Shown: positions 1,192 to 40,500 of the stretch, in pieces
Layout: every line of letters begins with the position of its first letter
How positions within the stretch are numbered: position 1 is the stretch's first letter
Source: Amphiscolops sp. MND2022
Lineage: Eukaryota
Direction: 5' to 3'
Assembly: GCA_964187785.1 (NCBI GenBank)
Contig: OZ076417.1
Span: 30,318,001 to 30,382,000 of the forward strand
Length of the DNA: 64,000 bases
Position numbers and translations under genes: made by a program
Notes under the pieces: model-generated
Told to the model about the DNA's origin: nothing
Seen by the model: the letters and a program-made list of their open reading frames with translations, nothing else
Database searches by the model: none

Positions 1192-1566
1192 CTTGATATT
1201 TTTATCATAATTGCTCAGCAGAAGGTGAACTCGATCCAACTCGTCGTTATGAAGCACGATATCCTCAAGCACTTCATTCGGCACTTCGGTCACATTGTCA
1301 AACTTCGTCAGCCAATGAGAGAAGACGTCCATCTCATCTTGCAGAGCTTCCGACTGGCCGATGAACGAATCGACGCTCTGGATTCGATGGTTTACTTTTT
1401 CGTGGAAGTCGGAGAGCTTTTTGGGCAAAGATTCCAGCAGAAATTTAAGACGTTTGTCCGATTCCGCGCAATCTGTTGACGGGTCTCTTTGAGCAGCTAA
1501 GACACTCACTGTTGCAACTCGCTTGTCCATGTCTCGCATCTTAGCCGCAACTTTCGCGTTAATTTT
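1192..1566 (-). CDS. Exon: spectrin repeats
   Basis: Acceptor ttttttgcag|AAA, donor AAG|gttagt, 375 bp, phase 0-0. LQDEMDVFSHWLTKFD is a spectrin motif. The gene presumably continues left of the window. Confidence 0.8.
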
Positions 1567-19500: not shown

Positions 19501-22500
19501 TTTCGCCAATTTCTTCTGATGTGATATCTTCGGTAGTGTGCAGTTGCGGAATCTTTTCACCGTGGAGGAAGGTTTTTGAAGTCTCTGGCTCTGGAATATT
19601 TGCAGTTTCTATTTGTTCCGTTTCTTCCGTCTCGGCATCTGCATCGTGGCACACAGGAAATCGATCGAGAGTTTCGGCTTCTAAACTGGTTAAAAACCGT
19701 TTTCGAGACTCTGTGTTCACTTGATCTACAATCTCATCGTCGTTTTGTTCTTCAATTTCTTCATCGCTTTCTATAAGCGAAGTGTCCACTTTTGTAGAGA
19801 TTCCTCTCTTGGTATCGGGCTGTGCAACTGGACTAGCCATTGCTTTGTCGTCGTCTCTTGTTTCGAAGGCCATTTGAACGACAGGTTCGCTTTGGTACTG
19901 TAGAACGTTTTCATCATCCGCAGTGTCGTCACTTGTTTCAGACACAACATTGACTAGAAGAGTAACAGCTGGTTCTGCGCTACTTTCTTTCTCTGGTTGT
20001 ACAATTACATTCAAGGTCTCGTCGGTAATTAAAAACTTGTCTCCTATTGGAATACTTTCGACGACATCCCGTAAAGTGTCCTCTTCGATCTTTGTTTCAG
20101 GCTGAGCTAGATTCTCTGCTCTTTGAGTTTTTTCTTCGAGGGCTTGGGTAGGTTGAACTTCTGAAGCAATCACTGATTCCTCAATTTGAGAGGGGGTAAC
20201 ATGGTCTGAGGAAAAATTTTCATCCACTTTATCAATGTATGATACACCTGAAACAGAATCCACATCGGTGGGGAAAATCTGATCCTTCGGTTCATCGACG
20301 AACATCGGTCTGTCACTTTTGACGTGGTCAACCTCTTCAATGGCACCAAGTTCCTGGACTTCCTCTATTTCAGGAGCTACAACTGCAGGTTGGCTTGAAT
20401 CCAACATTTCAGCAGAATCCAGTTTGCTTTTGGAAACTTCAAAAGATGCACCTTGTAGGTCGCTTGTTTCGGGATGCTGTTCAAGAGTTTCATTATCATC
20501 ATTAGGTAGTTCGCTGGCAGCGATCTCATTCCGTAGAACAATCACGTCCCCCAGAGAAACTAGCTTTGAGTCGTCCAGTTCCTGAATAGTGTCAGACTTT
20601 GCAAAAGCGACGCCTTCTGCCAGTAAAGCAGGGCTGTATCGATCTTCTGGAATGTTTTCAAATTCTTCGCTCATTAGTTGTAAGTTTCTGCCCATTTGTG
20701 ATATCAGTTCATCAGAAAGCAAGCTATCTTGGTCTACGCCAGTGGTTCTTTGATCCATTAGTCCTGGCGATTCAGGTTCCAGAAGTTGCTCCAAATTGTC
20801 TGTTTGTTTTTGTTCAACATCTTCTTCTAGTTCTGAGTCTACTTTTTCAGCGGATTCTGGTTCATACATATCTGAAAGAACTGGTTTTTGATCGACCGGA
20901 TGGGTAATTTTAGGCCAGTCAAAAGCTCCAACTTCTGCGTCTTTTTCATTCAAAGCAATTATTTCATCAATGTTTGAAGGAACTGGTGCCGATGAAAATC
21001 GATTGGTTACGGCATCAGTATCTGGATCTCCCATTTCTTGTATCAGTTTTTCAGCGTCATCATTTTCCAATTCAACGTCGTCTATCAAAACTGGCACTAA
21101 AGTATCACTCGTTTCCGGCTCCAACTCAGTTTTCAGTTTTTCATTCAACACTGGTTTAGTTTCTTGTTCAAAAACAGGTTCATTTAGTTTTTCTTCCGAC
21201 TCAAGTTTCTCTTGCAAACTTTCCTCCGGTTCTCTTTGCACCTCGGATCTTTTCTCAAAGTCTGGTCGAAGTTCGGACTGGCTTTTGTGATAGGGTTGTT
21301 CAACAGATTCAGTCAGTATCTCCTCGGAGTCATGTGCAGGTTCTTCAACCAAGTCATGGTCGCCTTTCAAGACATTTATTTCTGCTGTCAAAAATCTTGA
21401 CGCCGAATCTGGTTTTATTTCGTCTGGTAAAGCTTCTTTTTCATCGACTGCTTCTAGTTCTTGTCCAACTACTGGAATGCTACCTGCGGCTAAATGACGC
21501 TTCTGTGGATATTCAGCACTATCCGATTGCCTCTCGAAGTTTCCTTCTTCAGGAACTAATGCGTCTTCTTCCGGAGTCAAGTCAACTTTCTCAACTGCAA
21601 GGAACCTCGATTGTTTGTCATCTGGCATTTCAGGCAGTTGTTCATCGGTAACTTCCAATGGGGCATTTTCAGTAACTTCTCCAACGGGAATCTTTTCGCT
21701 ATGCAAGAATGTTTTAGACAATTCAGACTCCAACTGTTCTGTTTCCATGTCTTCCAATCCCTCAATTGGTTCAATTATATCACCACTTGTATCAAGCTGA
21801 TCGACGCTTTCCTGTTTCACACCAGTTAGGAATCTCTTCTGAAGCTCAAATTCCAATTGGTTTCCGGGTTCTTTGTTTTCGACTTCTTCTATCTCTTGAG
21901 GTTCGAAAGGAGAAGACTCAATTGTTGTGAAATTTCCTTTAGGTACATCAGAATTAACCGATAAACTTGGTGAATCTGTGTCAGCGCCTTTGAATTTAGG
22001 CTCAGAATCTTCTTCAATCACTGGTTCAACCTTTTCTTCTGGCTTGAAAGTCTGGTCTTCCGACAGAGGTGTTATCCTTTGCCAATCCAGAGTTCCAATT
22101 TCAGCGTCAACTTCTTCTAGAGGAACTATCTCATCAATTTTCACATGCATAGGAGATGAATGGGCGTCAGTAACTAATAAATCCGGGTCTGGTTCTCCAA
22201 GCTTTTCGATAAGTTTGACCGAATCATCGTTCTCTAATTCGACATCGTCGATCAATACTGGGACTAAAAGGTCACGTGGTTTTTCGTTCAACTCGGACAC
22301 CAATTTCTCATCTAATATTGGTTCCAGTGGCTTTGGAGCCGCTTCTTCAGTTTCTGCCACATCTTCGGCTAGACTTTCTTTTTCGTCAACTTCACGTGTA
22401 ACTTTGCTTAACTGCGAATCTGGGAATTTGATATCTTGTTGGCTAGGATCAACTATAACCAGGTCCACTGCTGGATCTTCAAAAGACTTCGGTTGAGTGT

Positions 22501-25500
22501 CCACAAACGCGAAAGCGACTCCGCCGTGGAGATATGATGGCATGGCTGATTCTTCTGCTTGCTGCAGGAATCGAGCATCGGAGAAAACTATATCCTGGCT
22601 TTGGTCTGTTATTAAAGCTGGCAGAGACTCAACTTCCTTCCCTTCTGCTGCTTGAGCATCTGAAAGGTACTTTCAAACACTGCCCGAAAATGTCCATAAC
22701 GTGAAACCATTCCTTAACTTAGTCATCAAAATATGTTTTCAAAAATGATGCTCAGCCGCTAGTTAGATGAACTACAGTACAACTTTATTCGCATGCATTA
22801 TCAAAATAGTTACTAATCAGAAATCAATTGCCTGCTTCTGAAGGAAGCAAAAACGCAAAATGTTTTGTTAGTCTTGACAATTGGGGTTCACAATTGGAGT
22901 TAGTAGGGACAAACTCTACAGACAACAAACATTCAATCGTCTTATACGTTTGTTCAGAATTACGTCTACGAGTAAAAACTGTAAGTTATCAGGACATTCA
23001 TGCTCAGAAGGATTTACAGGAGACACTTCATGCTAATCGGGCTATTGGCTCTTGTATGTATTAATAAAACAATTTCATTAGTCTTACTAACCTGAATGTC
23101 GTTGGATGGTCTCCAAATCTGAAGGTTCCAAGTCAGATGGAGGTATCGGTGCCACATTTTGGGTGCTAAAAGCCGGAGCTCCGGACCCCACAAAACAAGC
23201 GCCATCTGAAGGCAGCGTTTCCACATCAGCCGCACTTGGCACGGTTTCTACTTCAACAGGCATATCAAGCTCGAGATCAGTCAAAGTCTTTGAAGATTCA
23301 GGCATCGTTTCAGAAACATCAGCATCGAAGGGTATCTCTTTTTCCGGTAGCGTCTCTTGCGTCACTGGCTGTGAGTGCACAACAAGAGGTAATGCTTTGC
23401 TTTCAAATTCTGGTGCCAAATCCACTGCCTCTGCAGTCTCGGTCAGAGGCTCTTTCAAAGCTTGTTCGTCATCTGGTTCGAGCTTCTCCTCAGAGTAATG
23501 GATGTACACCTCCGGAAAAACTTGACTCACTGTTTCTTCGTTTTCTGGTTGGTTCTCAAGAGTAGCGTCTGCTTTCATCTCTGTCTTCTCTCGTTCCAAA
23601 AGTTCCAGTTCTCCAGCGTCGTCTAACGGCAGCGTTTCTGCATCAGACTTACTTGGCACAGCTTCTACTTCAACCGGCACATCCAACTCGAGATCAGTCA
23701 AAGTCTTCGATACTTCAGGCATCGTTTCAGAAATTTCAGCATCGAAAAGTACCTCTTCCTCCGGTAATGTCTCCTGCTTCACTGGCTGTGAGTGCACAAC
23801 AACAGGGGTTGCTTCGCTTTCGAACTCTGGTGCCACATCCGCTGCCTCTACAGTCTGGGTCTGAGGCTCCTTCAAAGCTTGTTCAACATCTAGCTCGAGC
23901 TTCTCCTCAGAGTGCTGGATGTACATCTCCGGAGAAACTTCACTCACTGTTTCTTCGTTTTCTGGTTGGCTCTCAAGTGTATTCTCTGCTTTCATCTCGG
24001 TCTTTTCTGGTTTCAAACGTTCCAGTTCTTCAGCGTCGTCTGAAGGCAGCGTTTCTGCATCAGACTTACTTGGCGCAGTTTCTACTTCAACCGGCACATC
24101 CAACTCGAGATCAGTCAAAGTCTTCGATACTTCAGGCATCGTTTCAGAAATTTCAGCATCGAAAAGTACCTCTTCCTCCGGTAATGTCTCCTGCTTCACT
24201 GGCTGTGAGTGCACAACAACAGGGGTTGCTTCGCTTTCGAACTCTGGTGCCACATCCGCTGCCTCTACAGTCTGGGTCTGAGGCTCCTTCAAAGCTTGTT
24301 CAACATCTGGCTCGAGCTTCTCTTCAGAGTGCTGGATGTACATCTCTGGAGAAACTTCACTCACTGTTTCTTCGTTTTGTGGTTGGTTCTCAAGAGTACC
24401 GTCTGCTTTCATCACGGTCTTCTCTGGTTCCAAAAGTTTCAGTTCTCCAGCGTCTTCGAAAGGCAGCGTTTCTGCATCAGACTTACTCGGCACAGTTTCT
24501 ACTTCAACCGGCACATCCAACTCGAGATCAGTCAAAGTCTTCGATACATCAGGCATCGTTTCAGAAACGTCAGCAGCGAAAAGTATCTCTTTCTCCGGTA
24601 GTGTCTCCTGCTTCACTGGCTGTGTGTGCACAACAACAGGTGTTGCTTCGCTTTCAAACTCTGGTGTAACATCCGCTGCCTCTACAGTCTGGGTCTGAGG
24701 CTCCTTCAAAGCTTGTTCAACATCTGGCTCGAGCTTATCCTCAGAGTGCTGGATGTACATCTCCGGAGAAACTTGACTCGTTGTTTCTTCGTTTTCTGGT
24801 TGGCTCTCAAGTGTATTCTCTGCTTTCATCTCGGTCTTTTCTGGTTTCAAACGTTCCAGTTCTTCAGCGTCGTCTAAAGGCAGCGTTTCTGCATCAAACT
24901 TACTTGGCACAGTTTCTACCTCAACCGGCACATCCAACTCGAGATCAGTCAAAGTTTTCGATACTTCAGGCATCGTTTCAGAAACTTCAGCATCGAAAAG
25001 TATCTCTTCCTCCGGTAGTGTCTCCTGCTTCACTGGCTGTGAGTGCACAACAACAGGGGTTGCTTCGCTTTCGAACTCTGGTGCCACATCCGATGCCTCT
25101 ACAGTCTGGGTCTGAGGCTCCTTCAAAGCTTGTTCAACATCTAGCTCGAGCTTCTCCTCAGAGTGCTGGATGTACATCTCCGGAAAAACTTGACTCGCTG
25201 TTTCTTCGTTTTCTGGTTGGTTCTCAAGAGTACCGTCTGCTTTCATCTCTGTCTTCTCTCGTTCCAAAAGTTCCAGTTCTCCAGCGTCATCTAACGGCAG
25301 CGTTTCTGCATCAGACTTACTTGGCACAGTTTCTACTTCAACCGGCACATCCAACTTGAGATCAGTCAAAGTCTTCGATACTTCAGGCATCGTTTCAGAA
25401 ACTTCAGCATCGAAAAGTATCTCTTCCTCCGGTAGTGTCTCCTGCTTCACTGGCTGTGAGTGCACAACAACAGGGGTTGCTTCGCTTTCGAACTCTGGTG

Positions 25501-28500
25501 CCACATCCGATGCCTCTACAGTCTGGGTCTGAGGCTCCTTCAAAGCTTGTTCAACATCTAGCTCGAGCTTCTCCTCAGAGTGCTGGATGTACATCTCCGG
25601 AAAAACTTGACTCGCTGTTTCTTCGTTTTCTGGTTGGTTCTCAAGAGTACCGTCTGCTTTCATCTCTGTCTTCTCTCGTTCCAAAAGTTCCAGTTCTCCA
25701 GCGTCATCTAACGGCAGCGTTTCTGCATCAGACTTACTTGGCACAGTTTCTACTTCAACCGGCACATCCAACTCGAGATCAATCAAAGTCTTCGATACTT
25801 CAGGCATCGTTTCAGAAACTTCAGCATCGAAAAGTATCTCTTCCTCCGGTAGTGTCTCCTGCTTCACTGGCTGTGAGTGCACAACAACAGGGGTTGCTTC
25901 GCTTTCGAACTCTGGTGCCACATCCGCTGCCTCTACAGTCTGGGTCTGAGGCTCCTTCAAAGCTTGTTCAACATCTGGCTCGAGCTTATCCTCAGAGTGC
26001 TGGATGTACATCTCCGGAGAAACTTGACTCGCTGTTTCTTCGTTTTCTGGTTGGCTCTCAAGTGTATTCTCTGCTTTCATCTCGGTCTTTTCTGGTTTCA
26101 AACGTTCCAGTTCTTCAGCGTCGTCTAAAGGCAGCGTTTCTGCATCAGACTTACTTGGCACAGTTTCTACCTCAACCGGCACATCCAACTCGAGATCAGT
26201 CAAAGTTTTCGATACTTCAGGCATCGTTTCAGAAACTTCAGCATCGAAAAGTATCTCTTCCTCCGGTAGTGTCTCCTGCTTCACTGGCTGTGAGTGCACA
26301 ACAACAGGGGTTGCTTCGCTTTCGAACTCTGGTGCCACATCCGATGCCTCTACAGTCTGGGTCTGAGGCTCCTTCAAAGCTTGTTCAACATCTAGCTCGA
26401 GCTTCTCCTCAGAGTGCTGGATGTACATCTCCGGAGAAACTTCACTCACTGTTTCGTCGTTTTCTGTTTGGTTCTCAAGAGTACCGTCTGCTTTCATCAC
26501 GGTCTTTTCTGGTTTCAAAAGTTCCAGTTCTTCAGCGTCGTCTAAAGGCAGCGTTTCTGCATCAGACTTACTTGGCACAGTTTCTAGTTGAACCGGCACG
26601 TCCAACTCGAGATCAGTCAAAGTCTTCGATACTTCAGGCATCGTTTCAGAAACTTCAGCATCGAAAAGTATCTCTTCCTCCGGTAGTGTCTCCTGCTTCA
26701 CTGGCTGTGAGTGCACAACAAGGGGTGTTGCTTTGCTTTCAAACTCTGGTGCCACATCCGCTGCCTCTGCAGTCTCGATCCGAGTCTCTTTCAAAGCTTG
26801 TTCGTCATCTGGCTCGAGCTTGTCCTCAGAGAGCTGGATAAACATCTCAGGAGAAATTTCCCCCACTGTTTCTTCGTTTTCTGGTTGGCTAGCAAGAGTA
26901 TCGTCTGGTTTCACCTCGGCCTTCTCTGGTTCCAAAATTTCCAGTTCTCCAGCGTCTTCGAAAGGCAGCGTTTCTGCATCAGACTTACTTGGCAAAGTTT
27001 CTACTTCAACCGGCACATCCAACTCGAGATCAATCAAAGTCTTCGTTACTTCAGGGATCGTTTCAGAAACTTCAGCATCGAAAAGTGTCTCTTTCTCCGG
27101 TAGTGTCTCCTGCTTCACTGGCTGTGAGTGCACAACAACAGGTGTTGCTTTGCTTTCAAACTCTGTTGTCACATCAGCTGCCTCTGCAGTCTCGGTCAGA
27201 GGCTCTTTCAAAGCTTGTTCGTCATCTGGTTCGAGCTTCTCCTCATAGTGATGGATGTACATCTCCGGAAAAACTTGACTCGCTGTTTCTTCGTTTTCTG
27301 GTTGGTTCTCAAGAGTACCGTCTGCTTTCATCTCTGTCTTCTCTCGTTCCAAAAGTTCCAGTTCTCCAGCGTCGTCTAACGGCAGCGTTTCTGCATCAGA
27401 CTTACTTGGCACAGTTTCTACTTCAACCGGCACATCCAACTCGAGATCAGTCAAAGTCTTCGATACTTCAGGCATCGTTTCAGAAACTTCAGCATCAAAA
27501 AGTATCTCTTCCTCCGGTAGTGTCTCCTGCTTCACTGGCTGTGAGTGCACAAGAGGTGTTGCTTTGCTTTCAAACTCTGGTGCCACATCCGCTGCCTCTG
27601 CAGTCTCGATCCGAGTCTCTTTCAAAGCTTGTTCGTCATCTGGCTCGAGCTTCTCCTTAGAGAGCTGGATAAACATCTCAGGAGAAACTTCCTCCACTGT
27701 TTCTTCGTTTTCTGGTTGGTTCGCAAGAGTATCGTCTGCTTTCATCTCGGCCTTCTCTGGTTCCAAAAATTCCAGTTCTCCAGCAGCGTCCAATGGCAGC
27801 GTTTCTGCATCAGACTTACTTGGCACAGTTTCTACTTCAACCGGCACATCCAATTCGAGATCAGTCAAAGTCTTCGATACTTCAGGCATCGTTTCAGAAA
27901 CTTCAGCATCGAAAAGTATCTCTTCCTCCGGTAGTGTCTCCTGCTTCACTGGCTGTGAGTGCACAACAAGAGGTGTTGCTTTGCTTTCAAACTCTGGTGC
28001 CACATCCGCTGCCTCTGCAGTCTCGATCCGAGTCTCTTTCAAAGCTTGTTCGTCATCTGGCTCGAGCTTCTCCTCAGAGAGCTGGATAAACATCTCAGGA
28101 GAAACTTCCTCCACTGTTTCTTCGTTTTCTGGTTGGTTCGCAAGAGTATCGTCTGTTTTCATCTCGGCCTTCTCTGGTTCCAAAAATTCCAGTTCTCCAA
28201 CGTCTTCGAAAGGCAGCGTTTCTGCATCAGACTTACTTGGCACAGTTTCTACTTCAACCGGCACATCCAATTCGAGATCAGTCAAAGTCTTCGATACTTC
28301 AGGCATCGTTTCAGAAACTTCAGCATCGAAAAGTATCTCTTCCTCCGGTAGTGTCTCCTGCTTCACTGGCTGTGAGTGCACAACAAGAGGTGTTGCTTTG
28401 CTTTCAAACTCTGGTTCCACATCCGCTGCCTCTGCAGTCTCGATCCGAGTCTCTTTCAAAGCTTGTTCGTCATCTGGCTCGAGCTTCTCCTCAGAGAGCT

Positions 28501-31500
28501 GGATAAACATCTCAGGAGAAACTTCCTCCACTGTTTCTTCGTTTTCTGGTTGGTTCGCAAGAGTATCGTCTGTTTTCATCTCGGCCTTCTCTGGTTCCAA
28601 AAATTCCAGTTCTCCAACGTCTTCGAAAGGCAGCGTTTCTGCATCAGACTTACTTGGCACAGTTTCTACTTCAACCGGCACATCCAATTCGAGATCAGTC
28701 AAAGTCTTCGATACTTCAGGCATCGTTTCAGAAACTTCAGCATCGAAAAGTATCTCTTCCTCCGGTAGTGTCTCCTGCTTCACTGGCTGTGAGTGCACAA
28801 CAAGAGGTGTTGCTTTGCTTTCAAACTCTGGTGCCACATCCGCTGCCTCTGCAGTCTCGATCCGAGTCTCTTTCAAAGCTTGTTCGTCATCTGGCTCGAG
28901 CTTCTCCTCAGAGAGCTGGATAAACATCTCAGGAGAAACTTCCTCCACTGTTTCTTCGTTTTCTGGTTGGTTCGCAAGAGTATCGTCTGTTTTCATCTCG
29001 GCCTTCTCTGGTTCCAAAAATTCCAGTTCTCCAGCGTCTTCGAAAGGCAGCGTTTCTGCATCAGACTTACTTGGCAAAGTTTCTACTTCAACCGGCACAT
29101 CCATCTCGAGCTCATTCAAAGTCTTCGTTACTTCAGGGATCGTTTCAGAAACTTCAGCATCGAAAAGTGTCTCTTTCTCCGGTAGTGTCTCCTGCTTCAC
29201 GGGCTGTGAGTGCACAACAACAGGTGTTGCTTTGCTTTCAAACTCTGTTGTCACATCAGCTGCCTCTGCAGTCTCGGTCAGAGGCTCTTTCAAAGCTTGT
29301 TCGTCATCTGGTTCGAGCTTCTCCTCAGAGTGATGGATGTACATCTCCGGAAAAACTTGACTCGCTGTTTCTTCGTTTTCTGGTTGGTTCTCAAGAGTAT
29401 CGTCTGCTTTCATCTCGGCCTTCTCTGGTTCCAAAAATTCCAGTTCTCCAGCGTCTTCGAAAGGCAGCGTTTCTGTATCAGACTTACTTGGCACAGCTTC
29501 TACTTCAACCGGCACATCCAACTTGAGATCAGTCAAAGTCTTCGATACTTCAGGCATCGTTTCAGAAACTTCAGCATCGAAAAGTATCTCTTCCTCCGGT
29601 AGTGTCTCCTGCTTCACTGGCTGTGAGTGCACAACAAGAGGTGTTGCTTTGCTTTCAAACTCTGGTGCCACATCCGCTGCCTCTGCAGTCTCGATCCGAG
29701 TTTCTTTCAAAGCTTGTTCGTCATCTGGCTCGAGCTTCTCCTCAGAGAGCTGGATAAACATCTCAGGAGAAACTTCCCCAACTGTTTCTTCGTTTTCTGG
29801 TTGGTTCGCAAGAGTATCGTCTGCTTTCATCTCGGCCTTCTCTGGTTCCAAAAATTCCAGTTCTCCAGCGTCTTCGAAAGGCAGCGTTTCTGCATCAGAC
29901 TTACTTGGCAAAGTTTCTACTTCAACCGGTACATCCAACTCGAGATCAGTCAAAGTCTTCGTTACTTCAGGGATCGTCTCGGAAACTTCAGCATCGAAAA
30001 GTGTCTCTTTCTCCGGTAGTGTCTCCTGCTTCACTGGCTGTGAGTGCACAACAAGAGGTGTTGCTTTGCTTTCAAACTCTGGTGCCACATCCGCTGCCTC
30101 TGCAGTCTCGATCCGAGTTTCTTTCAAAGCTTGTTCGTCATCTGGCTCGAGCTTCTCCTCAGAGAGCTGGATAAACATCTCAGGAGAAACTTCCCCAACT
30201 GTTTCTTCGTTTTCTGGTTGGTTCGCAAGAGTATCGTCTGCTTTCATCTCGGCCTTCTCTGGTTCCAAAAATTCCAGTTCTCCAGCGTCTTCGAAAGGCA
30301 GCGTTTCTGCATCAGACTTACTTGGCAAAGTTTCTACTTCAACCGGTACATCCAACTCGAGATCAGTCAAAGTCTTCGTTACTTCAGGGATCGTCTCGGA
30401 AACTTCAGCATCGAAAAGTGTCTCTTTCTCCGGTAGTGTCTCCTGCTTCACTGGCTGTGAGTGCACAACAACAGGTGATGCTTTGCTTTCAAACTCTGTT
30501 CTCACATCAGCTGCCTCTGCAGTCTCGGTCAGAGGCTCTTTCAAATCTTGTTCATCATCTGTTTCGAGCTTCTCCTCAGAGTGATGGATGTACATCTCCG
30601 GAAAAACTTGACTCGCTGTTTCTTCGTTTTCTGGTTGGTTCTCAAGAGTACCGTCTGCTTTCATCTCTGTCTTCTCTCGTTCCAAAAGTTCCAGTTCTCC
30701 AGCGTCATCTAACGGCAGCGTTTCTGCATCAGACTTACTTGGCACAGTTTCTACTTCAACCGGCACATCCAACTCGAGATCAGTCAAAGTCTTCGATACT
30801 TCAGGCATCGTTTCCGAAACTTCAGCATCGAAAAGTATCTCTTTCTCCGGTAGAGTCTCCTGCTTCAGAGGCTGTGAGTGCACAACAAGAGGTGTTGCTT
30901 TGCTTTCAAACTCCGGTGCCACATCCGTTGCCTCTCCAGTCTCGGTCCAAGGCTCTTTCAAAGCTTGTTCGTCATCTGGCTCGAGCTTCTCCTCAGAGAG
31001 CTGGATAAACATCTCAGAAGAAACTTCCTCCACTGTGTCTTTGTTTTCTGGTTGGTTCGCAAGAGTATCGTCTGCTTTCATCTCGGCCTTCTCTGGTTCC
31101 AAAAATTCCAATTCTCCAGCATCTTCGAAAGGCAGCGTTTCTGCATCAGACTTACTTGGCACAGTTTCTACTTCAACCGGCACATCCAACTCGAGATCAG
31201 TCAACGTCTTCGTTACTTCAGGGATCGTTTCAGAAACTTCAGCATCGAAAAGTGTCTCTTTCTCCGGTAGTGTCTCCTGCTTCACTGGCTGTGAGTGCAC
31301 AACAACAGGTGCTGCTTTGCTTTCAAACTCTGTTGTCACATCAGCTGCCTCTGCAGTCTCGGTCAGAGGCTGTTTCAAAGCTTGTTCGTCATCTGGCTCG
31401 AGCTTCTCGTCAGAGAGCTGGATAAACATCTCAGGAGAAACTTCCTCCACTGTTTCTTCGTTTTCTGGTTGGTTCGCAAGAGTATCGTCTGCTTTCATCT

Positions 31501-34500
31501 CGGCCTTCTCTGGTTCCAAAAATTCCAGTTCTCCAGCATCTTCGAAAGGCAGCGTTTCTGCATCAGACTTACTTGGCACAGTTTCTACTTCAACCGGCAC
31601 ATCCAACTCGAGATCAGTCAAAGTCTTCGTTACTTCAGGGATCGTTTCAGAAACTTCAGCATCGAAAAGTGTCTCTTTCTCAGGTAGTGTCTCCTGCTTC
31701 ACTGGCTGTGAGTGAACAACAACAGGTGTTGCTTTGCTTTCAAACTCTGTTGTCACATCAGCTGCCTCTGCAGTCTCGGTCAGAGGCTCTTTCAAAGCTT
31801 GTTCGTCATCTGACTCGAGCTTCTCCTCAGAGAGCTGGATAAACATCTCAGGAGAAATTTCCTCCACTGTTTCTTCGTTTTCTGGTTGGTTCGCAAGAGT
31901 ATCGTCTGCTTTCATCTCGGCCTTCTCTGGTTCCAAAAATTCCAGTTCTCCGGCATCTTCGAAAGGTAGCGTTTCTGCATCAGACTTACTTGGCACAGTT
32001 TCTACTTCAACCGGCACATCCAACTCGAGATCAGTCAAAGTCTTCGTTACTTCAGGTGTCGTTTCAGAAACTTCAGCATCGAAAAGTGTCTCTTCCTCCG
32101 GTAGTGTCTCCTGCTTCACTGGCTGTGAGTGCACAACAACAGGTGTTGCTTTGCTTTCAAACTCTGTTGTCACATCAGCTGCCTCTGCAGTCTCGGTCAG
32201 AGGCTCTTTCAAAGCTTGTTCGTCATCTGGCTCGAGCTTCTCCTCAGAGAGCTGGATAAACATCTCAGGAGAAACTTCCCCCACTGTTTCTCCGTTTTCT
32301 GGTTGGTTCTCAAGTGTATGCTCTGCTTTCATCTCTGTCTTCTCTTGTTCCAAAAAATCAAGTTCTCCAGCGTCTTCGAAAGGCAGCGTTTCTGCATCAG
32401 ACCTATTTGGCAAAATTTCTACTTCAACCGGCACATCCAACTCGAGATCATTCAAAGTCTTCGATACTTCAGGCTTCGTTTCAGAAACTTCAGCATCGAA
32501 AAGTGTCTCTTCCTCCGGTAGTGTCTCCTGCTTCACTGGCTGTGAGTGCACAACAACAGGTGTTGCTTTGCTTTCAAACTCTGTTGTCACATCAGCTGCT
32601 TCTGCAGTCTCGGTCAGAGGCTCTTTCAAAGCTTGTTCGTCACCTGGCTCGAGCTTCTCCTCAGAGAGCTGGATAAACAACTCAGGAGAAACTTCCTCCA
32701 CTGTTTCTTCGTTTTCTGGTTGGTTCGCAAGAGTATCGTCTGCTTTCATCTCGGCCTTCTCTGGTTCCAAAAATTCCAGTTCTCCGGCATCTTCGAAAGG
32801 TAGCGTTTCTGCATCAGACTTACTTGGCACAGTTTCTACTTCAACCGGCACATCCAACTCGAGATCAGTCAAAGTCTTCGTTACTTCAGGTGTCGTTTCA
32901 GAAACTTCAGCATCGAAAAGTGTCTCTTCCTCCGGTAGTGTCTCCTGCTTCACTGGCTGTGAGCGCACAACAACAGGTGTTGCTTTGCTTTCAAACTCTG
33001 TTGTCACATCAGCTGCCTCTGCAGTCTCGGTCAGGGGCTCTTTCAAAGCTTGTTCGTCATCTGGCTCGAGCTTCTCCTCAGAGAGCTGGATAAACATCTC
33101 AGGAGAAACTTCCCCCACTGTTTCTTCGTTTTCTGGTTGGTTCGCAAGAGTATCGTCTGCTTTCATCTCGGCCTTCTCTGGTTCCAAAAATTCCAGTTCT
33201 CCGGCATCTTCGAAAGGTAGCGTTTCTGCATCAGACTTACTTGGCACAGTTTCTACTTCAACCGGCACATCCAACTCGAGATCAGTCAAAGTCTTCGTTA
33301 CTTCAGGTGTCGTTTCAGAAACTTCAGCATCGAAAAGTGTCTCTTCCTCCGGTAGTGTCTCCTGCTTCACTGGCTGTGAGTGCACAACAACAGGTGTTGC
33401 TTTGCTTTCAAACTCTGTTGTCACATCAGCTGCCTCTGCAGTCTCGGTCAGAGGCTCTTTCAAAGCTTGTTCGTCATCTGGCTCGAGCTTCTCCTCAGAG
33501 AGCTGGATAAACATCTCAGGAGAAACTTCCCCCACTGTTTCTCCGTTTTCTGGTTGGTTCTCAAGTGTATGCTCTGCTTTCATCTCTGTCTTCTCTTGTT
33601 CCAAAAAATCAAGTTCTCCAGCGTCTTCGAAAGGCAGCGTTTCTGCATCAGACTTATTTGGCAAAACTTCTACTTCAACCGGCACATCCAACTCGAGATC
33701 ATTCAAAGTCTTCGATACTTCAGGCTTCGTTTCAGAAACTTCAGCATCGAAAAGTGTCTCTTCCTCCGGTAGTGTCTCCTGCTTCACTGGCTGTGAGTGC
33801 ACAACAACAGGTGTTGCTTTGCTTTCAAACTCTGTTGTCACATCAGCTGCTTCTGCAGTCTCGGTCAGAGGCTCTTTCAAAGCTTGTTCGTCACCTGGCT
33901 CGAGCTTCTCCTCAGAGAGCTGGATAAACAACTCAGGAGAAACTTCCTCCACTGTTTCTTCGTTTTCTGGTTGGTTCGCAAGAGTATCGTCTGCTTTCAT
34001 CTCGGCCTTCTCTGGTTCCAAAAATTCCAGTTCTCCGGCATCTTCGAAAGGTAGCGTTTCTGCATCAGACTTACTTGGCACAGTTTCTACTTCAACCGGC
34101 ACATCCAACTCGAGATCAGTCAAAGTCTTCGTTACTTCAGGTGTCGTTTCAGAAACTTCAGCATCGAAAAGTGTCTCTTCCTCCGGTAGTGTCTCCTGCT
34201 TCACTGGCTGTGAGTGCACAACAACAGGTGTTGCTTTGCTTTCAAACTCTGTTGTCACATCAGCTGCCTCTGCAGTCTCGGTCAGAGGCTCTTTCAAAGC
34301 TTGTTCGTCATCTGGCTCGAGCTTCTCCTCAGAGAGCTGGATAAACATCTCAGGAGAAACTTCCCCCACTGTTTCTCCGTTTTCTGGTTGGTTCTCAAGA
34401 GTATCGTCTGCTTTCATCTCGGTCTTCTCTGGTTCTAAAAATTCCAGTTCTCCAGTGTCTTCGAAGGGCAGCGTTTCTGCATCAGACTTACTAGGCACAG

Positions 34501-37500
34501 TTTCTACTTCAACCGGCACATCCAACTCGAGATCAGTCAAAGTCTTCGTTACTTCAGGCAGGAATTCAGAAACTTCACCATCGAAAAGTATTTCTTTCTC
34601 CGGTAGTGTCACCTGCTTCACTGGCTGTGAGTGCACAACAAGAGGTAATGCTTTGCTTTCAAACTCTGTTGTCACATCAGCTGCCTCTGCAGTCTCGGTC
34701 AGAGGCTCTTTCAAAGCTTGTTCGTCATCTGGCTCGAGCTTCTCCTCAGAGAGCTGGATAAACATCTCAGGAGAAACTTCCCCCACTGTTTCTCCGTTTT
34801 CTGGTTGGTTCTCAACAGTATCGTCTGCTTTCATCTCGGTCTTCTCTGGTTCTAAAAATTCCAGTTCTCCAGCGTCTTCGAAAGGCAGCGTTTCGGCATC
34901 AGACTTACTTGGCACAGTTTCTACTTCAACCGGAACATCCAACTCGAGATCAGTCAATGTCTTCGATACTTCAGGCATCGTTTCCGAAACTTCAGCATCG
35001 AAAAGTGTCTCTTTCTCCGGTAGTGTCTCCTGCTTCACTGGCTGTGAGTGCACAACAAGAGGTAATGCTTTGCTTTCAAATTCTGGTGCCAAATCCACTG
35101 CCTCTGCAGTCTCGGACTGAGGCTCCTTCAAAGCTTGTTCAACATCTGGCTCGAGCTTCTCCTCAGAGTGCTGGATGTACATCTCCGGAGAAATTTCACT
35201 CACTGTTTCTTCGTTTTCTGGTTGGTTCTCAAGTGTATGCTCTGCTTTCATCTCTGTCTTCTCTTGTTCCAAAAAATCAAGTTCTCCAGCGTCTTCGAAA
35301 GGCAGCGTTTCTGCATCAGACTTATTTGGCAAAATTTCTACTTCAACCGGCACATCCAACTCGAGATCATTCAAAGTCTTCGATACTTCAGGCTTCGTTT
35401 CAGAAACTTCAGCATCGAAAAGTGTCTCTTTCTCCGGTAGTGTCTCCTGCTTCACTGGCTGTGAGTGCACAACAACTGGTGTTGCTTTGCTTTCAAACTC
35501 TGTTGTCACATCAGCTGCCTCTGCAGTCTCAGTCAGAGGCTCTTTCAAAGCTTGTTCGTCATCCGGCCCGAGCTTCTCCTCAGAGAGCTGGATAAACATC
35601 TCAGGAGAAACTTCCCCCACTCTTTTTTCTTCGTTTTCTGGTTGGCTCTCAAGTGTATCATCTGCTTTCATCTCGGTCTTTTCTGGTTTCAAACGTTCCA
35701 GTTCTCCAGCAGCGTCCAATGGCAGCGTTTCTGCATCAGACTTACTTGGCACAGTTTCTACTTCAACCGGCACATCCAATTCGAGATCAGTCAAAGTCTT
35801 CGATACTTCAGGCATCGTTTCAGAAACGTCAGCCTCGAAAAGTATCTCTCTCTCCGGTAGTGTCTCTTGCTCGGCCGGCTCTGTTTCAAAGTTACAGGCT
35901 CCATTTTCGTGCTCAGACACGTAACTTGATTCTTCAGACAAATCAAGTGCACATATTTGTTGTTCCTCAATCGATAAGTCTGAATGAATACTAGTATATC
36001 TCGAATATTGAAGTGGTTCAACGTTTGGGTCAATTTCGGTTAACGGAACAATTAGGTTGCGTTTTTGAGGAATTCTGGGAGGATATCGGCTCTCAGTTGC
36101 ATCGGGATCCGGGTCACCAAGTTCCTCAAGAATTTCATCGGTAAAGTTCTCCAATTCGACATCCTGAACCAAAATTGGTACCAAGAAATCTTTGTATTCA
36201 AGCTCCAGGTCTTCTGAAACTGGTTCATTTATCCCTGATTGTGAGTTATCATCTGAAACAACTTCACTTTCATCATCTGGCTCTAGTTTTTCTTCTTTCT
36301 GAGGTTGTCTCTCCGAAGCTAAGTAAACTTCAGATTGGCTTCTGAAAAATTTCACCGGCGTTTCACTTACAATTTCCTCTGATTCCTGTTGCTCTACCAT
36401 ATCGTCAGTATCAACTCTCACAACATTCGACTCCGCCCACAAAAATCTTGCAGAGATGTCATCAGGTTTTTCTTCGTCGAACAGTGGTGCGTCCTGGTCG
36501 ACAGCTTCTGGTGACTCTTCCGCCATAATTGCTATGCTACCAGCAGATAAATGTCTTTTCTGGGTGACCTCGGGGGTGTTTCCTTCGTCTTCCACTTTTT
36601 CATATTCAATTAATACAACTTCTACTTCAGGTATTAGTTCGATTTTCTCTGTAGAAAGAAACCTAGAAAGCTTATCAAAAACCACTTCTGTGCCAGTTGT
36701 TACCTCTTCCGTCGTTTCCTCCGCCGGACCGGATTCTTCCACCTCGCACTGTGGAATTTTTTGACCGACTAGAAAATTATTCAAAGCGCCGGATTCTAAA
36801 TTTTTGTCAGGTGAAGTCTCTTCTTTTTCTTCCTCCACCTTGTCTTCTTCGGGATCATCTAATAGCAGTTCAACACTATTGTGTTTAAATGTCGTCAAAC
36901 CCCTGCGCTGAGGTTCGAAGAGTTCTTTTTGGACTCCTGTTTGATCGTCTTCGCCTTCTTGAACTAAAATTGGCACCAACAAATCACGAGAACTTTTTTC
37001 TTCATCAAGTTTGGTCTCCTCTTCTGTTTCGTCTCCGGAACTTGATTCGTTTTCGGATTGACAGATTAACCTAGGCCATTCTAGAGTTCCAGCTTCAACA
37101 GGTACTTCCTTTAGAGGTACTATTTCAGTGAATTTTGAAAGTACTGGAGCCTTATACATTTTGTCTACTTTTGTAGGATCCGGTTCTCCGAGTTCTGTAA
37201 CTATTGTCTCCGAGTCATTTTCTAGTTCAACTTCGCCCAAGATAATAGGCACCACAACATCACTGTCTGTTGTTTCTATGTCGGGATGAAAGTCTTCCTC
37301 TTTGAGCTTGTCACGACTTTCTCCCAAAACTGTATCTTTGTGAACTGATAGAACTTTAGGTCTCTTGTAAACTTGTTCCTCCACTTCTCTGCGTTCTTCC
37401 ACAACTGGGAAATTTTCGACTGGTTTTTCGCTGTCCAGTTTTCGCTTGGGAACCTTATCTAAGATCACCTTTTCGGGTTTGCGTTTGTCTTCCAGCTGAG

Positions 37501-40500
37501 CAACTTCTGATGTTGTCCTCAAGGGTTCGGGTGCTTGATTGCAATCAATGAAATGAATAGAAGAGCCATAACCCGAAATGATATCAGTCGAATGAAACAC
37601 ATGTTCTAAACATGCAACAGTCATGCTGGGAAAGGGATCAGAGGAACAACAGAAATTTATGACAATTCATGGAAAATTCGTTCCTCAGAAAACTGAAGGA
37701 ACAACACCAGTGTAAAATTCAAGAAATCAATCATTATTTACAAACAAAAAAAACAATCCGTGTGCCAATTCCAGGTCAAAAGTGGTGATTTCAATAAGAG
37801 CAATCACTATTTACTGCAATCAATGAAAGGCCGACAGTGGTTTTCATTAAAACATGGATAGAGTCCATTAAAATTGAAGTAATCAAAAGATGCGGTAAAG
37901 AGGGAATCAAAAAACCATGAACAAAAAATTCAAGACAGATGCAGGTTCAAGATATCTAAGATATCCAATTCAGTTTTTCTCTGTACTACCGGGGTTCGAA
38001 CAAAAAATTACAATACCACCCCCCTCCCACTAGCAGGTATATCAAGAAAATCCGATCAAACTCAAACTTCATTCAACCAACAAATTCGCTAGCAAAACCC
38101 AAGTTCAACAGGATTGAGAAGTTTTCACTGTGCATATCATCGCCACTCAATTTAGAACTTTACGCCGTGAACTTGAGAGAAAAAACAAACGGTTCTTCAG
38201 CGAAAGATGGCGCTTTGCCTATTTTCTGCACTAACAAAAATTAGCAGTTTTTGTCAACAAATTTTGTGGGAATTCGAGCCCGAAATAAAGTGACGGGGAA
38301 ATATTTGAGAGTGCAAAAACAGGACCATGGAAGGTTTGAACCTGAAAGTGTTCATTCAAACCACATGTCGTAAATTTTTGAATAAAAGGTCTGGTTCATA
38401 CAAATAATGCGGATTATATTAGAGTGCCTTTTACCAGACAAAATACGACACGCAGTAGCGGAAAAATCAATCGATGTTATAACTTCCGGTTTCCACAATG
38501 ATTAGTTGGGCAGTTCAAACCAATGAATGACATAAGAATTCTTGGTTTTTGTTTTCCTATTTTACACTGATAGCTGAAGTTCCATCTAATTTCCCAAAAC
38601 CATAACACCGAGCGGTTACCCAGACAAGCAAACATGCATGTTCTCATACAAAAACTGGAAAAATTCGTTGAGAGCATTGTTTTCGCAAAAAAGCACAAAT
38701 CTTTCAAAAAAACTATTACTTTCCGTGTGATGAATTCAGAAGAAAATGAACCAAGAATTTTGAAATCAACAAAACTTTGGACATCAATGACACTGCAGAT
38801 AGTATGATTCTCTTTTGAAAAGTATCCTGAAAGACAATTTTCAGAATCATATTATTGAAAAGACAGGATTTTTTCTATTCACGTAACATTTTAAAAGAAT
38901 AAACACCAAATGAGCGCAAGCAGATGAATACATGGCTGCAGAATTGAATATCAGAGCAAAATCATGAAATTTTTGCGCGCAATCGAACGCTCGCATGATT
39001 TCAATGAATATTTCCAGTGATTGTAAATGGGTAAGACACAAAAAAAAACATAGAAGACGGACCCTCGTTAGACAAAACAAAAATTCCACTCCCCAAAAGT
39101 GAAAAAAAAATGAAAAAACAATTCTCACCAGTTTCGTCGATTCCTGATAATTTCATCAACTCAGGTCGTTCTGAAACAAAAATTTTCATTCAACTTCTCA
39201 TTAGCATACATTCTTCGTATGCACACACACTCTTTGTATGTGCAGATACACAAGCGCAAACAAAAATTTGAATCCAAAAAAAACCATGGACTGGTTGAGA
39301 ATAAACGAACCTCTATTTCGTTTGTTTTGCTGATACAATTTTTCTATGAACAAAATAATGAAATTTCCACCCACTTTCACTTCGATTTTTCAGATTTTTT
39401 CTTAAATTCTGAAATCAAAATTTCAGAACATCATTACAACACATTGCACCTTGAAAATCTATGAACTGACCACAAGTAACACATAACTCACCATAAATCC
39501 CAGAACTCATTGGCTCCAGTAAAGACTGTTCAGCAGACATTTTCATGACCTTTTCTTCTTTTTCAGGATCTAAAAATGCCACCCCCTCAGCAAGTAACGA
39601 TGGCTCAACCTTTTCGGGTTTAACACTTTCTTCTCGCGCTACTTCAATATGAGTTAGGGCTGAAAATGCGGGGATTTCGGAACTTTTTTGCAGATCATTT
39701 CCATGTGTCTCATCTAAAAACACCACCCCATCGGCAAGTAACGATGGGTCAACTTTTTCAGGTGCAACACGCTCTTCTCGCGCTGCTTCAATATGAGTTA
39801 GGGCTGAAAATGCAGAAATGTCAGGACTTTTTTCCAACTCATTTCTATGTGTCTCAGGGAGCAACTCTTCCGGGTGGTATTCTGAGATAGCGTCAGCTAA
39901 GGATGTTGGAACTGGATCTTTGTTTTTAGACTCGCCAACATTCAAAATTGGTTGGAACGATTCGAGTTCAGATTGGGTAATTAGGTCGCTAGGGTCTGTT
40001 GAAGAAATGATGGGTTGGAATTTGTTTAGAGAGTCCAGAGAACTTGGTTCAGCCGGTGAGCTTAGGTCCTCTTCAGAAGAACTGACCACATCCATTTGCA
40101 ATGTTGGGAATGTTTGGTACACTATTTGCTTCTCAGGTGACGAGCTCAAAAGTACATCCAGGGTAGTTTCGGGGAGACTATCCATTTTAAGCAAAGGTTC
40201 TTTGCTGTCCTTACAAATTGGATCTTGTTCGATGATAGGTTGACATTCAGTCACCACGCTCATTTTCTCACCAGAATCCAGTTTCTGCAAATCTTCTCGG
40301 GTTTCGAGAATCTTCTGAGACCCAGGTTGAGTTGTCGGGATTTGACCCAGACTGCTCAAGTTTTCTTCTTTGGTTTCTTCATCCAATGGTTTAGCATATT
40401 CAACTGGTAATTCAGATTCTGGTTTCTTTTTAGATTCTTGATTCTCGGCGGATACGGTGTGTTCAGCTTTTTCGGGTTCATCCAATGCCTCCATAGAATC

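What the first reader, a model, noticed from the sequence alone, without database searches (positions are those of the whole stretch)
23205..35870. About 30 copies of a 139-aa ultra-acidic PEVK-like repeat: a candidate entropic spring or spacer in a spectraplakin
Seen: one representative unit counted by hand has 32 E, 9 D, 8 K, 0 R, 12 P, 13 V, 16 T and no C, W or Y. That is about -33 net charge per unit and about -1,000 over the array, with P+E+V+K near 47%. The frame is intact over 12.7 kb, and the only indels I noticed are 3-bp. Known: titin PEVK/polyE segments are disordered elastic, Ca2+-sensitive elements; I know of no spectraplakin with such an array. Inference: about 4,200 disordered residues (contour length near 1.5 micrometres at 0.36 nm per residue) could act as an elastic or charge-repulsive tether, for example in muscle attachment or epidermis.
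Basis: partly seen in the sequence, partly recalled or inferred. Interest (0 to 1): 0.8.

Follow-up and report, generated by a model that had tools for sequence, protein, structure and literature searches.

The report
Hypervariable acidic repeat array in spectraplakin
A giant exon of a worm's cytoskeletal linker gene (MACF1/Shot type) carries about 30 in-frame copies of a 139-residue, very acidic, apparently unfolded repeat found in no other species searched, and the two gene copies in one sample differ greatly in repeat number and sequence.

Summary

**Gene context.** The array lies in an inferred 14,514-nt exon that starts and ends in codon phase 1. This exon sits between a 6,952-nt exon and a 15,912-nt plakin-repeat exon. 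The plakin-repeat part is 60-63% identical to Symsagittifera roscoffensis MACF1-like protein, so the spectraplakin context holds.

**Coding evidence.** The frame is under selection: no stops where about 11 are expected, and all indels are multiples of three. Residue identity is barely constrained (omega about 0.7-0.85).

**Structure and relatives.**
- No Pfam family fits the unit, and there is no titin PPAK motif.
- AlphaFold gives pLDDT 44 and no secondary structure.
- An exhaustive search of 1.84 billion proteins found only this species' own second allele.

**New finding.** That second allele has 24.0 units, and no unit is more than 94.7% identical across alleles, although the flanks are about 99.3% identical. 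Its diagnostic variants appear at roughly equal depth in the window's own sample.

**Reading.** This is a young, hypervariable coding minisatellite encoding a disordered polyanionic spacer. It resembles titin PEVK loosely in composition only. No RNA data exist, so expression and any spring function are untested. The scan has not reported it on other DNA.

The parts
23205..35878 (-). Array of 30 full 139-aa units (one of them 138 aa) plus a 56-residue partial last unit. Units are numbered u00 at 35462-35878 to u29 at 23372-23788; the partial u30 starts at 23371.
   Evidence: TRF; unit boundaries and composition; alignment of units.
23092..37605 (-). Inferred giant exon 2: 14,514 nt = 3 x 4838, codon phase 1 at both ends. 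It holds a 5' unique part, the array and a short tail.
   Evidence: Acceptor tttag|A at 37607-37606 and donor CAG|GTTAGT at 23091-23090 read. The in-frame stop lies inside the donor. No RNA evidence.
35993..37261 (-). Module in the 5' unique part of exon 2 (exon residues 136-558) that is paralogous to residues 134-590 of exon 3.
   Evidence: 37% identity, E 2e-49; E 2.5e-76 to the other allele's exon 3.
23092..23204 (-). Non-repeat tail of exon 2 after the last partial unit, ending at the splice donor.
   Evidence: Translation; sequence.
31709..34210 (-). Recent three-unit (1251-bp) higher-order duplication: units u04-u06 match u07-u09 at 99-100% identity.
   Evidence: Identity matrix.
39492..46443 (-). 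Inferred giant exon 1 (6,952 nt, phase 0 to phase 1). Acidic, with no Pfam family.
   Evidence: Acceptor ttacag|G, donor ATG|GTGAGT, no Pfam hit. The previous exon ends in phase 0 at 49689.
39129..39170 (-). Candidate 42-nt micro-exon in the intron between exons 1 and 2. It is open in phase 1 and phase-neutral.
   Evidence: tttcag| ... |gtgaga read. Inference only.
6748..22659 (-). Inferred giant exon 3 (15,912 nt = 3 x 5304, phase 1 at both ends). It has an acidic N-terminal part followed by the plakin-repeat region, which aligns at 7013-15169.
   Evidence: Acceptor tttcag|A, donor AAG|GTTAGT, Plectin PF00681 at 266 bits, 61% identity to S. roscoffensis isoform X1 residues 20-2745.

Best explanation
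The array is a young, lineage-restricted, in-frame coding minisatellite with a 417-bp period. It grew inside a duplicated giant exon of an acoel-type MACF1/Shot spectraplakin. If the exon is included, it adds about 4,200 residues (about 3,340 in the other allele) of intrinsically disordered polyanion, with about -0.22 net charge per residue. This stretch would lie between the N-terminal plakin domain and the plakin-repeat region.

Shown here:
- The repeat structure.
- Selection keeps the frame open while residues drift.
- Splice sites are compatible in phase.
- There is no recognisable fold and no homologue in another species.
- Unit turnover is rapid, by local duplication and deletion.
- The two alleles in one sample are very different.

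Inferred: it works as a length-tolerant, self-repelling flexible spacer or entropic tether. Such a tether would set reach and compliance between the two ends of the linker. It works by bulk composition, not by a precise sequence or length. It is analogous to titin PEVK/polyE and to the acidic tandem repeats of Drosophila Msp300-PE, but homologous to neither.
For: Repeat and composition.

Coding constraint:
- 282 distinct variants across the two alleles produce no real stop where about 10.7 are expected (P about 2e-5).
- The opposite-strand frame that is open in the unit consensus has collected 23 stops.
- Every length difference is a multiple of three: 3, 9 and 12 nt in the arrays and three 3-bp indels in the 5' unique part.
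- Omega is 0.66 pairwise and about 0.85 by distinct variants.

Gene context:
- Plectin repeats and MACF1-like homology.
- GT-AG sites give phase 1 at both ends of exons 2 and 3.
- The same phase-1 junction is present in S. roscoffensis.

Disorder and orphan status:
- No Pfam family for one unit at E up to 10.
- AlphaFold2 gives pLDDT 44.3, pTM 0.10 and no secondary structure.
- The charge-hydropathy plot places it on the disordered side.
- The Atlas best score is 0.79.
- One hit among 1.84 billion representatives, and it is this species' own allele.

Allelic variation:
- Flanks are 99.2-99.4% identical, against 30.4 and 24.0 units.
- All 52 full units have their nearest neighbour in their own allele, and the best cross-allele identity is 94.7%.
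- All 28 variants seen in sample S1's runs X2/X3 are those of the second allele; in the three bubbles where both forms were assembled the two have near-equal depth.

Precedent: Msp300-PE (PMC11230431) and the optional Shot plakin-repeat exon (PMC2173965).
Against: - There is no RNA evidence at all. No RNA run exists even for the conserved plakin exon, so inclusion of exon 2 and its splice sites are inferred.
- An upstream acceptor at 37627-37626 looks stronger by its pyrimidine tract but would be out of phase.
- The AlphaFold alignment had only 26 near-identical rows, so low confidence is weak proof of disorder.
- An open frame shows that truncation is harmful. It does not show that the array itself is useful.
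- Depletion of charge-changing variants is marginal (P = 0.03).
- A 20% length difference between alleles fits a neutral passenger as well as a tolerant spacer.
- RefSeq models of the S. roscoffensis gene start inside the exon-3 orthologue.
Confidence: 0.55

Rival explanations
1. Tolerated passenger. The array is an unstable minisatellite that expanded inside a cassette-competent exon. Its frame stays open only because stops would truncate the protein or trigger decay of an mRNA whose downstream domains matter. The acidic stretch has no function of its own.
For: - Omega is close to 1 (0.66-0.85).
- Alleles differ by 889 residues.
- No orthologous array in S. roscoffensis, whose upstream exon is acidic but unrelated.
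- Charge conservation is only marginal.
Against: - The neighbouring non-repeat parts of exons 1-3 are also acidic and open in both genera. This suggests the region's bulk character is kept.
- An array of 3,300-4,200 residues is costly to make.
- The first 60 residues of the unit vary less than the middle.
Confidence: 0.28
2. Multivalent docking platform. Each unit carries short linear motifs, or simply negative charge, that bind cations such as Ca2+ or basic proteins such as microtubule-associated factors. This is what has been proposed for the acidic repeats of Msp300-PE. The array would then concentrate partners rather than act mechanically.
For: - The N-terminal 60 residues of the unit are more conserved than the middle.
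- Proline-centred motifs recur in every unit.
- Precedent and proposal in PMC11230431.
Against: - No known motif family or domain matched.
- Sequence drift is high.
- No partner is known.
- Nothing here tests binding.
Confidence: 0.12
3. Not coding. The array is an intronic satellite whose open frame is an accident of a stop-free unit.
For: - Tandem copies of a stop-free unit are open by construction.
- Long open frames also occur on the opposite strand.
- There is no RNA evidence.
Against: - No stops where about 10.7 are expected over two alleles, while the control frame gained 23.
- All indels are in frame in both alleles and in a third allele.
- The open frame extends 1.7 kb beyond the array and ends exactly in a consensus donor that joins exon 3 in frame.
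- The 5' part is paralogous to coding sequence of exon 3.
Confidence: 0.04
4. A true homologue of titin/sallimus PEVK, or a folded repeat domain too divergent to recognise.
For: The unit is rich in P, E, V and T, lacks C and W, and is acidic like the polyE segments.
Against: - No PPAK hit or any other Pfam hit.
- P+E+V+K is 47% and lysine 6%.
- The unit is 139 aa, not about 28.
- The exhaustive HMMER search found no other protein.
- AlphaFold shows no structure.
Confidence: 0.02

Closest known systems
Drosophila Msp300-PE (nesprin) tandem repeats: a 108-aa unit repeated about 20 times and a 101-aa unit repeated about 19 times (PMC11230431)
   Same: Both are arrays of roughly 100-140-aa units, about 20-30 copies, highly similar to each other. 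Both are negatively charged, restricted to a narrow lineage, and sit inside a giant isoform of a spectrin-superfamily cytoskeletal linker.
   Different: The gene family differs (nesprin, not spectraplakin). There is no sequence similarity: the exhaustive search found nothing outside this species. According to that paper, AlphaFold 3 assigns structures to the Msp300 repeats, whereas this unit gets none. Allelic hypervariability was not reported there.
Titin PEVK and polyE segments
   Same: Both are proline- and glutamate-rich, lack cysteine and tryptophan, appear disordered, and are long enough to act as an entropic spring. Both sit inside a giant cytoskeletal protein.
   Different: There is no PPAK motif and no 28-aa period. 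P+E+V+K is 47% against about 70%. The unit is lysine-poor and strongly anionic throughout. The units are 93% alike and young rather than ancient and exon-by-exon. It is not homologous.
Shot plakin-repeat isoforms (Roper and Brown 2003, PMC2173965) and MACF1b
   Same: The insertion point is the same: optional giant exon(s) between the plakin domain and the spectrin rod. The downstream exon 3 carries the orthologous plakin repeats.
   Different: Shot has one 10,497-nt exon and isoforms up to 8,846 residues. Here three giant exons total 37.4 kb (12,459 codons), and one of them carries an acidic tandem array not described for Shot, MACF1, dystonin or VAB-10.
Coding minisatellites (VNTRs), for example in mucin genes (from general knowledge)
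   Same: Long-period tandem repeats in a single large exon, with copy-number alleles, local duplications, concerted evolution, and the frame preserved.
   Different: This is an intracellular cytoskeletal linker, not a secreted glycoprotein. The alleles differ in sequence as well as in number, far beyond their flanks.

Membership tests
Spectraplakin (MACF1/Shot/dystonin/VAB-10) - host gene | Plakin (plectin) repeats | tested here: met
   PF00681 scores 266 bits, E 6e-81, in exon 3. The region is 61% identical to S. roscoffensis MACF1-like X1 over 2750 aa.
Spectraplakin (MACF1/Shot/dystonin/VAB-10) - host gene | Plakin domain (spectrin-like repeats) upstream of the giant exons | tested here: inconclusive
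   Exon at 54127-55239 gives Spectrin_2 at 21.3 bits and Spectrin at 19 bits, both below their cut-offs.
Spectraplakin (MACF1/Shot/dystonin/VAB-10) - host gene | Spectrin-repeat rod, EF hands and GAS2 domain downstream; calponin-homology domains at the N-terminus | tested here: inconclusive
   Exons at 1192-4995 align to rod residues 2862-3169 of X1. The S. roscoffensis orthologue carries Spectrin, EF-hand and GAS2 families. The rest of the rod and the EF, GAS2 and CH parts lie outside the window and were not fetched.
Titin-type PEVK | PPAK-type motif of about 28 aa | tested here: not met
   No PPAK family among Pfam hits at E up to 1 for six units, or at E up to 10 for one and two units. The period is 139 aa.
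Titin-type PEVK | P+E+V+K about 70% of residues | tested here: not met
   46.8% in the unit and 45.5% in the array; lysine is 6%.
Titin-type PEVK | Disordered chain with entropic elasticity, Ca2+-sensitive | not testable with these tools
   Only proxies are available: pLDDT 44 with no secondary structure and charge-hydropathy on the disordered side.
Coding minisatellite / VNTR | Head-to-tail units with copy-number alleles in one species | tested here: met
   30.4 against 24.0 units. All 28 variants in sample S1's runs X2/X3 are those of the second allele, at about equal depth where both forms were assembled.
Coding minisatellite / VNTR | Frame preserved across units and alleles | tested here: met
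   No stops where about 10.7 are expected, and indels of 3, 9 and 12 nt only.
Pfam DUF7357 (PF24054) | Score above the gathering threshold from a real domain match | tested here: not met
   34 bits for six units with no single stretch passing. Two units give 19 bits against a 27-bit cut-off, and one unit gives nothing. The score is additive and compositional.
Msp300-PE-type repeats | Sequence homology to the 108-aa or 101-aa units | tested here: not met
   The exhaustive phmmer search of 1.84 billion representatives returned only this species' allele. The resemblance is architectural only.

The most novel reading that the evidence does not exclude
Two linked possibilities remain open.

First, all three giant exons may be included together. 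From the exon lengths plus the orthologue's C-terminal part, I estimate the product at about 17,000-18,000 residues. That would be a titin-scale spectraplakin whose 1.2-1.5-micrometre polyanionic segment is a real elastic or repulsive element of acoel epidermis or muscle attachment.

Second, the two array haplotypes are far more diverged than their flanks, which could mean they are old alleles kept by selection or by suppressed recombination. That would make this a natural length series for testing how linker length sets tissue mechanics.
Probability: 0.15. Interest if true: 0.7.

Novelty: new variant of a known kind. Interest (0 to 1): 0.45.

Why it matters
Giant cytoskeletal linkers often carry lineage-specific disordered arrays, but none has been described in a spectraplakin. 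Here two natural alleles, of 24 and 30 units, coexist in one sample. This offers a ready-made test of whether linker length and charge matter for a cytolinker.

It is also a clean example of a protein segment where selection keeps only the reading frame and the bulk character. The divergence peak centred on the array raises a further question: do long coding minisatellites raise the local mutation rate, or do they preserve old haplotypes? The finding also shows that the current S. roscoffensis gene models probably miss a large N-terminal coding region.

Tried and rejected
- **Pfam, six units:** only an additive sub-threshold DUF7357 signal. For one unit, two units and the 5' unique part there was nothing at or above cut-off.
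- **ESM Atlas by features:** best score 0.79 to an unrelated bacterial cluster, treated as no lead.
- **Unit profile against exons 1 and 3, the 5' part of exon 2 and the upstream spectrin exon:** all E values above 0.2, so the unit does not derive recognisably from neighbouring sequence.
- **BLASTP of exons 1 and 2 against S. roscoffensis isoform X8:** nothing significant.
- **tblastn of exon 1, the exon 2 unique part and the unit against the S. roscoffensis and third-species loci:** nothing.
- **RNA runs:** none on record for exon 2 or for the conserved plakin exon. Expression could not be tested, and the absence of runs says nothing about silencing.
- **Frame errors:** searches failed on frame and were repeated. 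One search failed partway on a frame error and was completed.
- **Direct exon 1 to exon 2 splice using the acceptor at 37627-37626:** rejected because the phases do not add up. The acceptor at 37607-37606 restores the frame.
- **Per-variant classification flags 1-2 'stops' in the second allele:** this is an artefact of scoring single changes against consensus codons. The real translation has none.
Full report

Yes. Tandem Repeats Finder reports one array at 23209-35871 with period 417, 30.4 copies, 93% matches and no indels. On the minus strand a single frame is free of stops from 23090 to 37666, which is 4859 codons. A short anchor motif recurs every 139 residues, with one 138-residue exception caused by one 3-bp deletion.

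Over the 30 full units (4169 residues) the net charge is -919 and the contour length is 1.50 micrometres at 0.36 nm per residue. The unit occurs nowhere else in the 1.07-Gb genome.

**2. What gene is it in?**

The next open exon downstream (6746-22672) carries Plectin repeats at 266 bits. It is 60-63% identical to 'microtubule-actin cross-linking factor 1-like' proteins of the acoel Symsagittifera roscoffensis. Four small exons further downstream align to that protein's rod. Upstream exons give weak spectrin-like hits. The host is therefore a MACF1/Shot-type spectraplakin of an animal whose nearest named relative in the databases is an acoel.

Reading the splice sites gives a coherent model:

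| Element | Coordinates | Length | Codon phase |
|---|---|---|---|
| Previous exon | ends 49689 | - | ends in phase 0 |
| Exon 1 | 46443-39492 | 6,952 nt | 0 to 1 |
| Exon 2 | 37605-23092 | 14,514 nt (3 x 4838) | 1 to 1 |
| Exon 3 | 22659-6748 | 15,912 nt (3 x 5304) | 1 to 1 |

- The stop that ends the exon-2 frame lies inside its consensus donor (CAG|GTTAGT). Joining that donor to exon 3 recreates an in-frame codon.
- Exons 2 and 3 can each be included or skipped without breaking the frame. This matches the optional 10,497-nt plakin-repeat exon of Drosophila shot (PMC2173965).
- The same phase-1 donor and acceptor pair flanks the orthologous junction in S. roscoffensis.
- All of this is inference from sequence. 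No RNA run exists for this organism in the index, not even for the conserved plakin exon.

**3. Is it coding?**

Tandem copies of a stop-free unit are open by construction, so I tested mutations rather than frame length.

- The window's array has 170 distinct variants relative to its consensus. About 6.0 should create stops under the observed transition/transversion ratio, and none does (P = 0.002).
- Adding the second allele gives 282 variants, about 10.7 expected stops and none real (P about 2e-5).
- As an internal control, the opposite-strand frame that is also stop-free in the consensus has accumulated 23 stops across the array.
- Every length difference within and between alleles is a multiple of three.
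- Amino-acid identity, by contrast, is barely constrained. Pooled pN/pS between units is 0.66. Distinct variants are 82 synonymous and 198 non-synonymous against 70.9 and 200.4 expected.
- Charge-changing substitutions are only marginally depleted (P = 0.03). The first 60 residues of the unit vary somewhat less than the middle.

**4. Fold and relatives**

- One unit matches no Pfam family at E up to 10. The DUF7357 score seen for six units is an additive artefact: 19 bits for two units against a 27-bit cut-off. No PPAK (titin PEVK) hit appears.
- The ESM Atlas gives nothing useful.
- AlphaFold2 on two units with a 26-row alignment gives mean pLDDT 44.3, pTM 0.10 and no secondary structure. The alignment is shallow, so this is supporting evidence only.
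- Mean hydropathy of 0.42 lies well below the charge-hydropathy boundary of 0.49. The fraction of charged residues is 0.35 and net charge per residue is -0.22.
- A profile of the unit finds nothing in the rest of the gene.
- An exhaustive HMMER search of 1.84 billion representative proteins returned a single protein.

**5. The single hit is the other allele, and it is very different**

The hit, P0001, is a 3956-residue open frame on a 596-kb contig of another assembly.

- Its flanks are 99.2-99.4% identical to the window (exon 1, intron, exon 3). The 5' unique part of exon 2 is only 97.2% identical, and the partial last unit plus tail 94.9%.
- Its array has 24.0 units instead of 30.4.
- All 52 full units have their nearest neighbour within their own allele (95-100%). 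The best cross-allele identity is 94.7%. Mean identity is 92.5% within alleles and 91.1% between them.
- Units near the 5' end of one array best match 5' units of the other, and likewise at the 3' end, so the arrays are collinear in outline.

Public contigs of four runs were laid on 35880-38400. In sample S1, runs X2 and X3 carry alternative contigs at three places, each form at roughly half the depth of the homozygous stretches. All 28 variant letters in those two runs are exactly those of P0001's allele. So both alleles sit in the same sample as the window's assembly. Sample S2 carries a third allele that shares 5 of its 14 variant letters with P0001's allele and, like it, has an in-frame 3-bp insertion at about 37312-37314.

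Within the window's allele, very recent events are visible. There is a three-unit duplication (u04-u06 against u07-u09, 99-100%) and there are identical neighbours (u13/u14, u17/u18, u24/u25).

Divergence between the alleles is 0-1% in most 400-bp windows. It rises to 1.5-4.8% in the 1.7 kb before the array and 3.2% just after it. Synonymous divergence is also raised in the 5' unique part: 3.2% against 0.8-1.6% in exons 1 and 3. I cannot tell whether this reflects array-associated hypermutation or two old haplotypes.

**6. Origin**

Residues 136-558 of exon 2 are 37% identical (E 2e-49) to residues 134-590 of exon 3, at almost the same offset from the acceptor.

Exon 2 therefore looks like a duplicate of the 5' end of exon 3, in which an unrelated 139-aa unit later amplified.

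In S. roscoffensis the exon upstream of the plakin repeats is also acidic (E 16%, D 9%) and open for 1116 codons. It is not recognisably related and has no 417-bp array. Conservation between the genera begins only at about residue 1372 of exon 3, at 46% identity. The acidic, fast-evolving character of this region is therefore shared. The array itself was found only in this species among those available.

**7. How it most likely works**

Shown:
- An in-frame, selection-maintained open frame.
- Near-free residue drift.
- Strong uniform negative charge.
- No detectable fold.
- Tolerance of an 889-residue length difference between alleles.

Inferred: when exon 2 is included, the array forms an expanded, self-repelling flexible segment between the actin/junction-binding N-terminus and the plakin-repeat and microtubule-binding parts. 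It would set reach and compliance by bulk length and charge.

This is what a PEVK or polyE segment does in titin, but the unit is not a PEVK by any defining feature tested. The closest architectural precedent is the pair of acidic, genus-restricted arrays of about 100 aa in Drosophila Msp300-PE (PMC11230431).

The main rival is that the array is a tolerated passenger, kept open only because truncation of the downstream domains is harmful. The data cannot exclude this.

**8. Novelty and score**

Lineage-specific disordered arrays in giant cytolinkers are a known kind. I found no report of one in a spectraplakin, and the allelic divergence is unusual. I rate it a new variant of a known kind, of moderate interest, limited by the complete lack of expression data. 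The scan has not reported this array on other DNA; the only overlapping notes are on this same stretch.

Noticed in passing
window 35974-37576 and 22963-23371, against L009: Allelic divergence peaks around the array: 1.5-4.8% before it and 3.2% after it. The adjoining intron (37577-39178) is 0-0.2% diverged and most other 400-bp windows 0-1%. Synonymous divergence is raised too. The cause could be hypermutation near the minisatellite or old haplotypes; this is unresolved.
   Followed up: partly
window 20764-21606 and 18616-19458 (minus strand, exon 3): An 843-bp segment is duplicated at 97% identity about 2.1 kb apart inside the acidic N-terminal part of exon 3. A further 195-bp pair is 94% identical (19416-19610 and 18408-18602).
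   Followed up: partly
L010:9941-22414 (S. roscoffensis) and proteins P0003, P0008: RefSeq MACF1-like isoform X1 starts at residue 1281 of the open giant exon. The 1,100 residues before that point are 46% identical to this window's exon 3 and open in both genera. The annotated models are therefore probably truncated at the N-terminus.
   Followed up: partly
window 39129-39170 (minus strand): Candidate 42-nt micro-exon with consensus acceptor and donor in the intron between giant exons 1 and 2. It is open in phase 1 and phase-neutral.
   Followed up: no
window 39568-39856: A 144-bp unit is repeated twice (84% match) at the 3' end of giant exon 1.
   Followed up: no
window 37873-37880: In run X4 (sample S2) a contig replaces 6 intronic letters with 106 others, an insertion/deletion polymorphism in the intron upstream of exon 2.
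   Followed up: no
L010:78-3425: The S. roscoffensis acidic exon upstream of the plakin repeats contains its own two-copy long repeat of roughly 200 residues, unrelated to the 139-aa unit.
   Followed up: no
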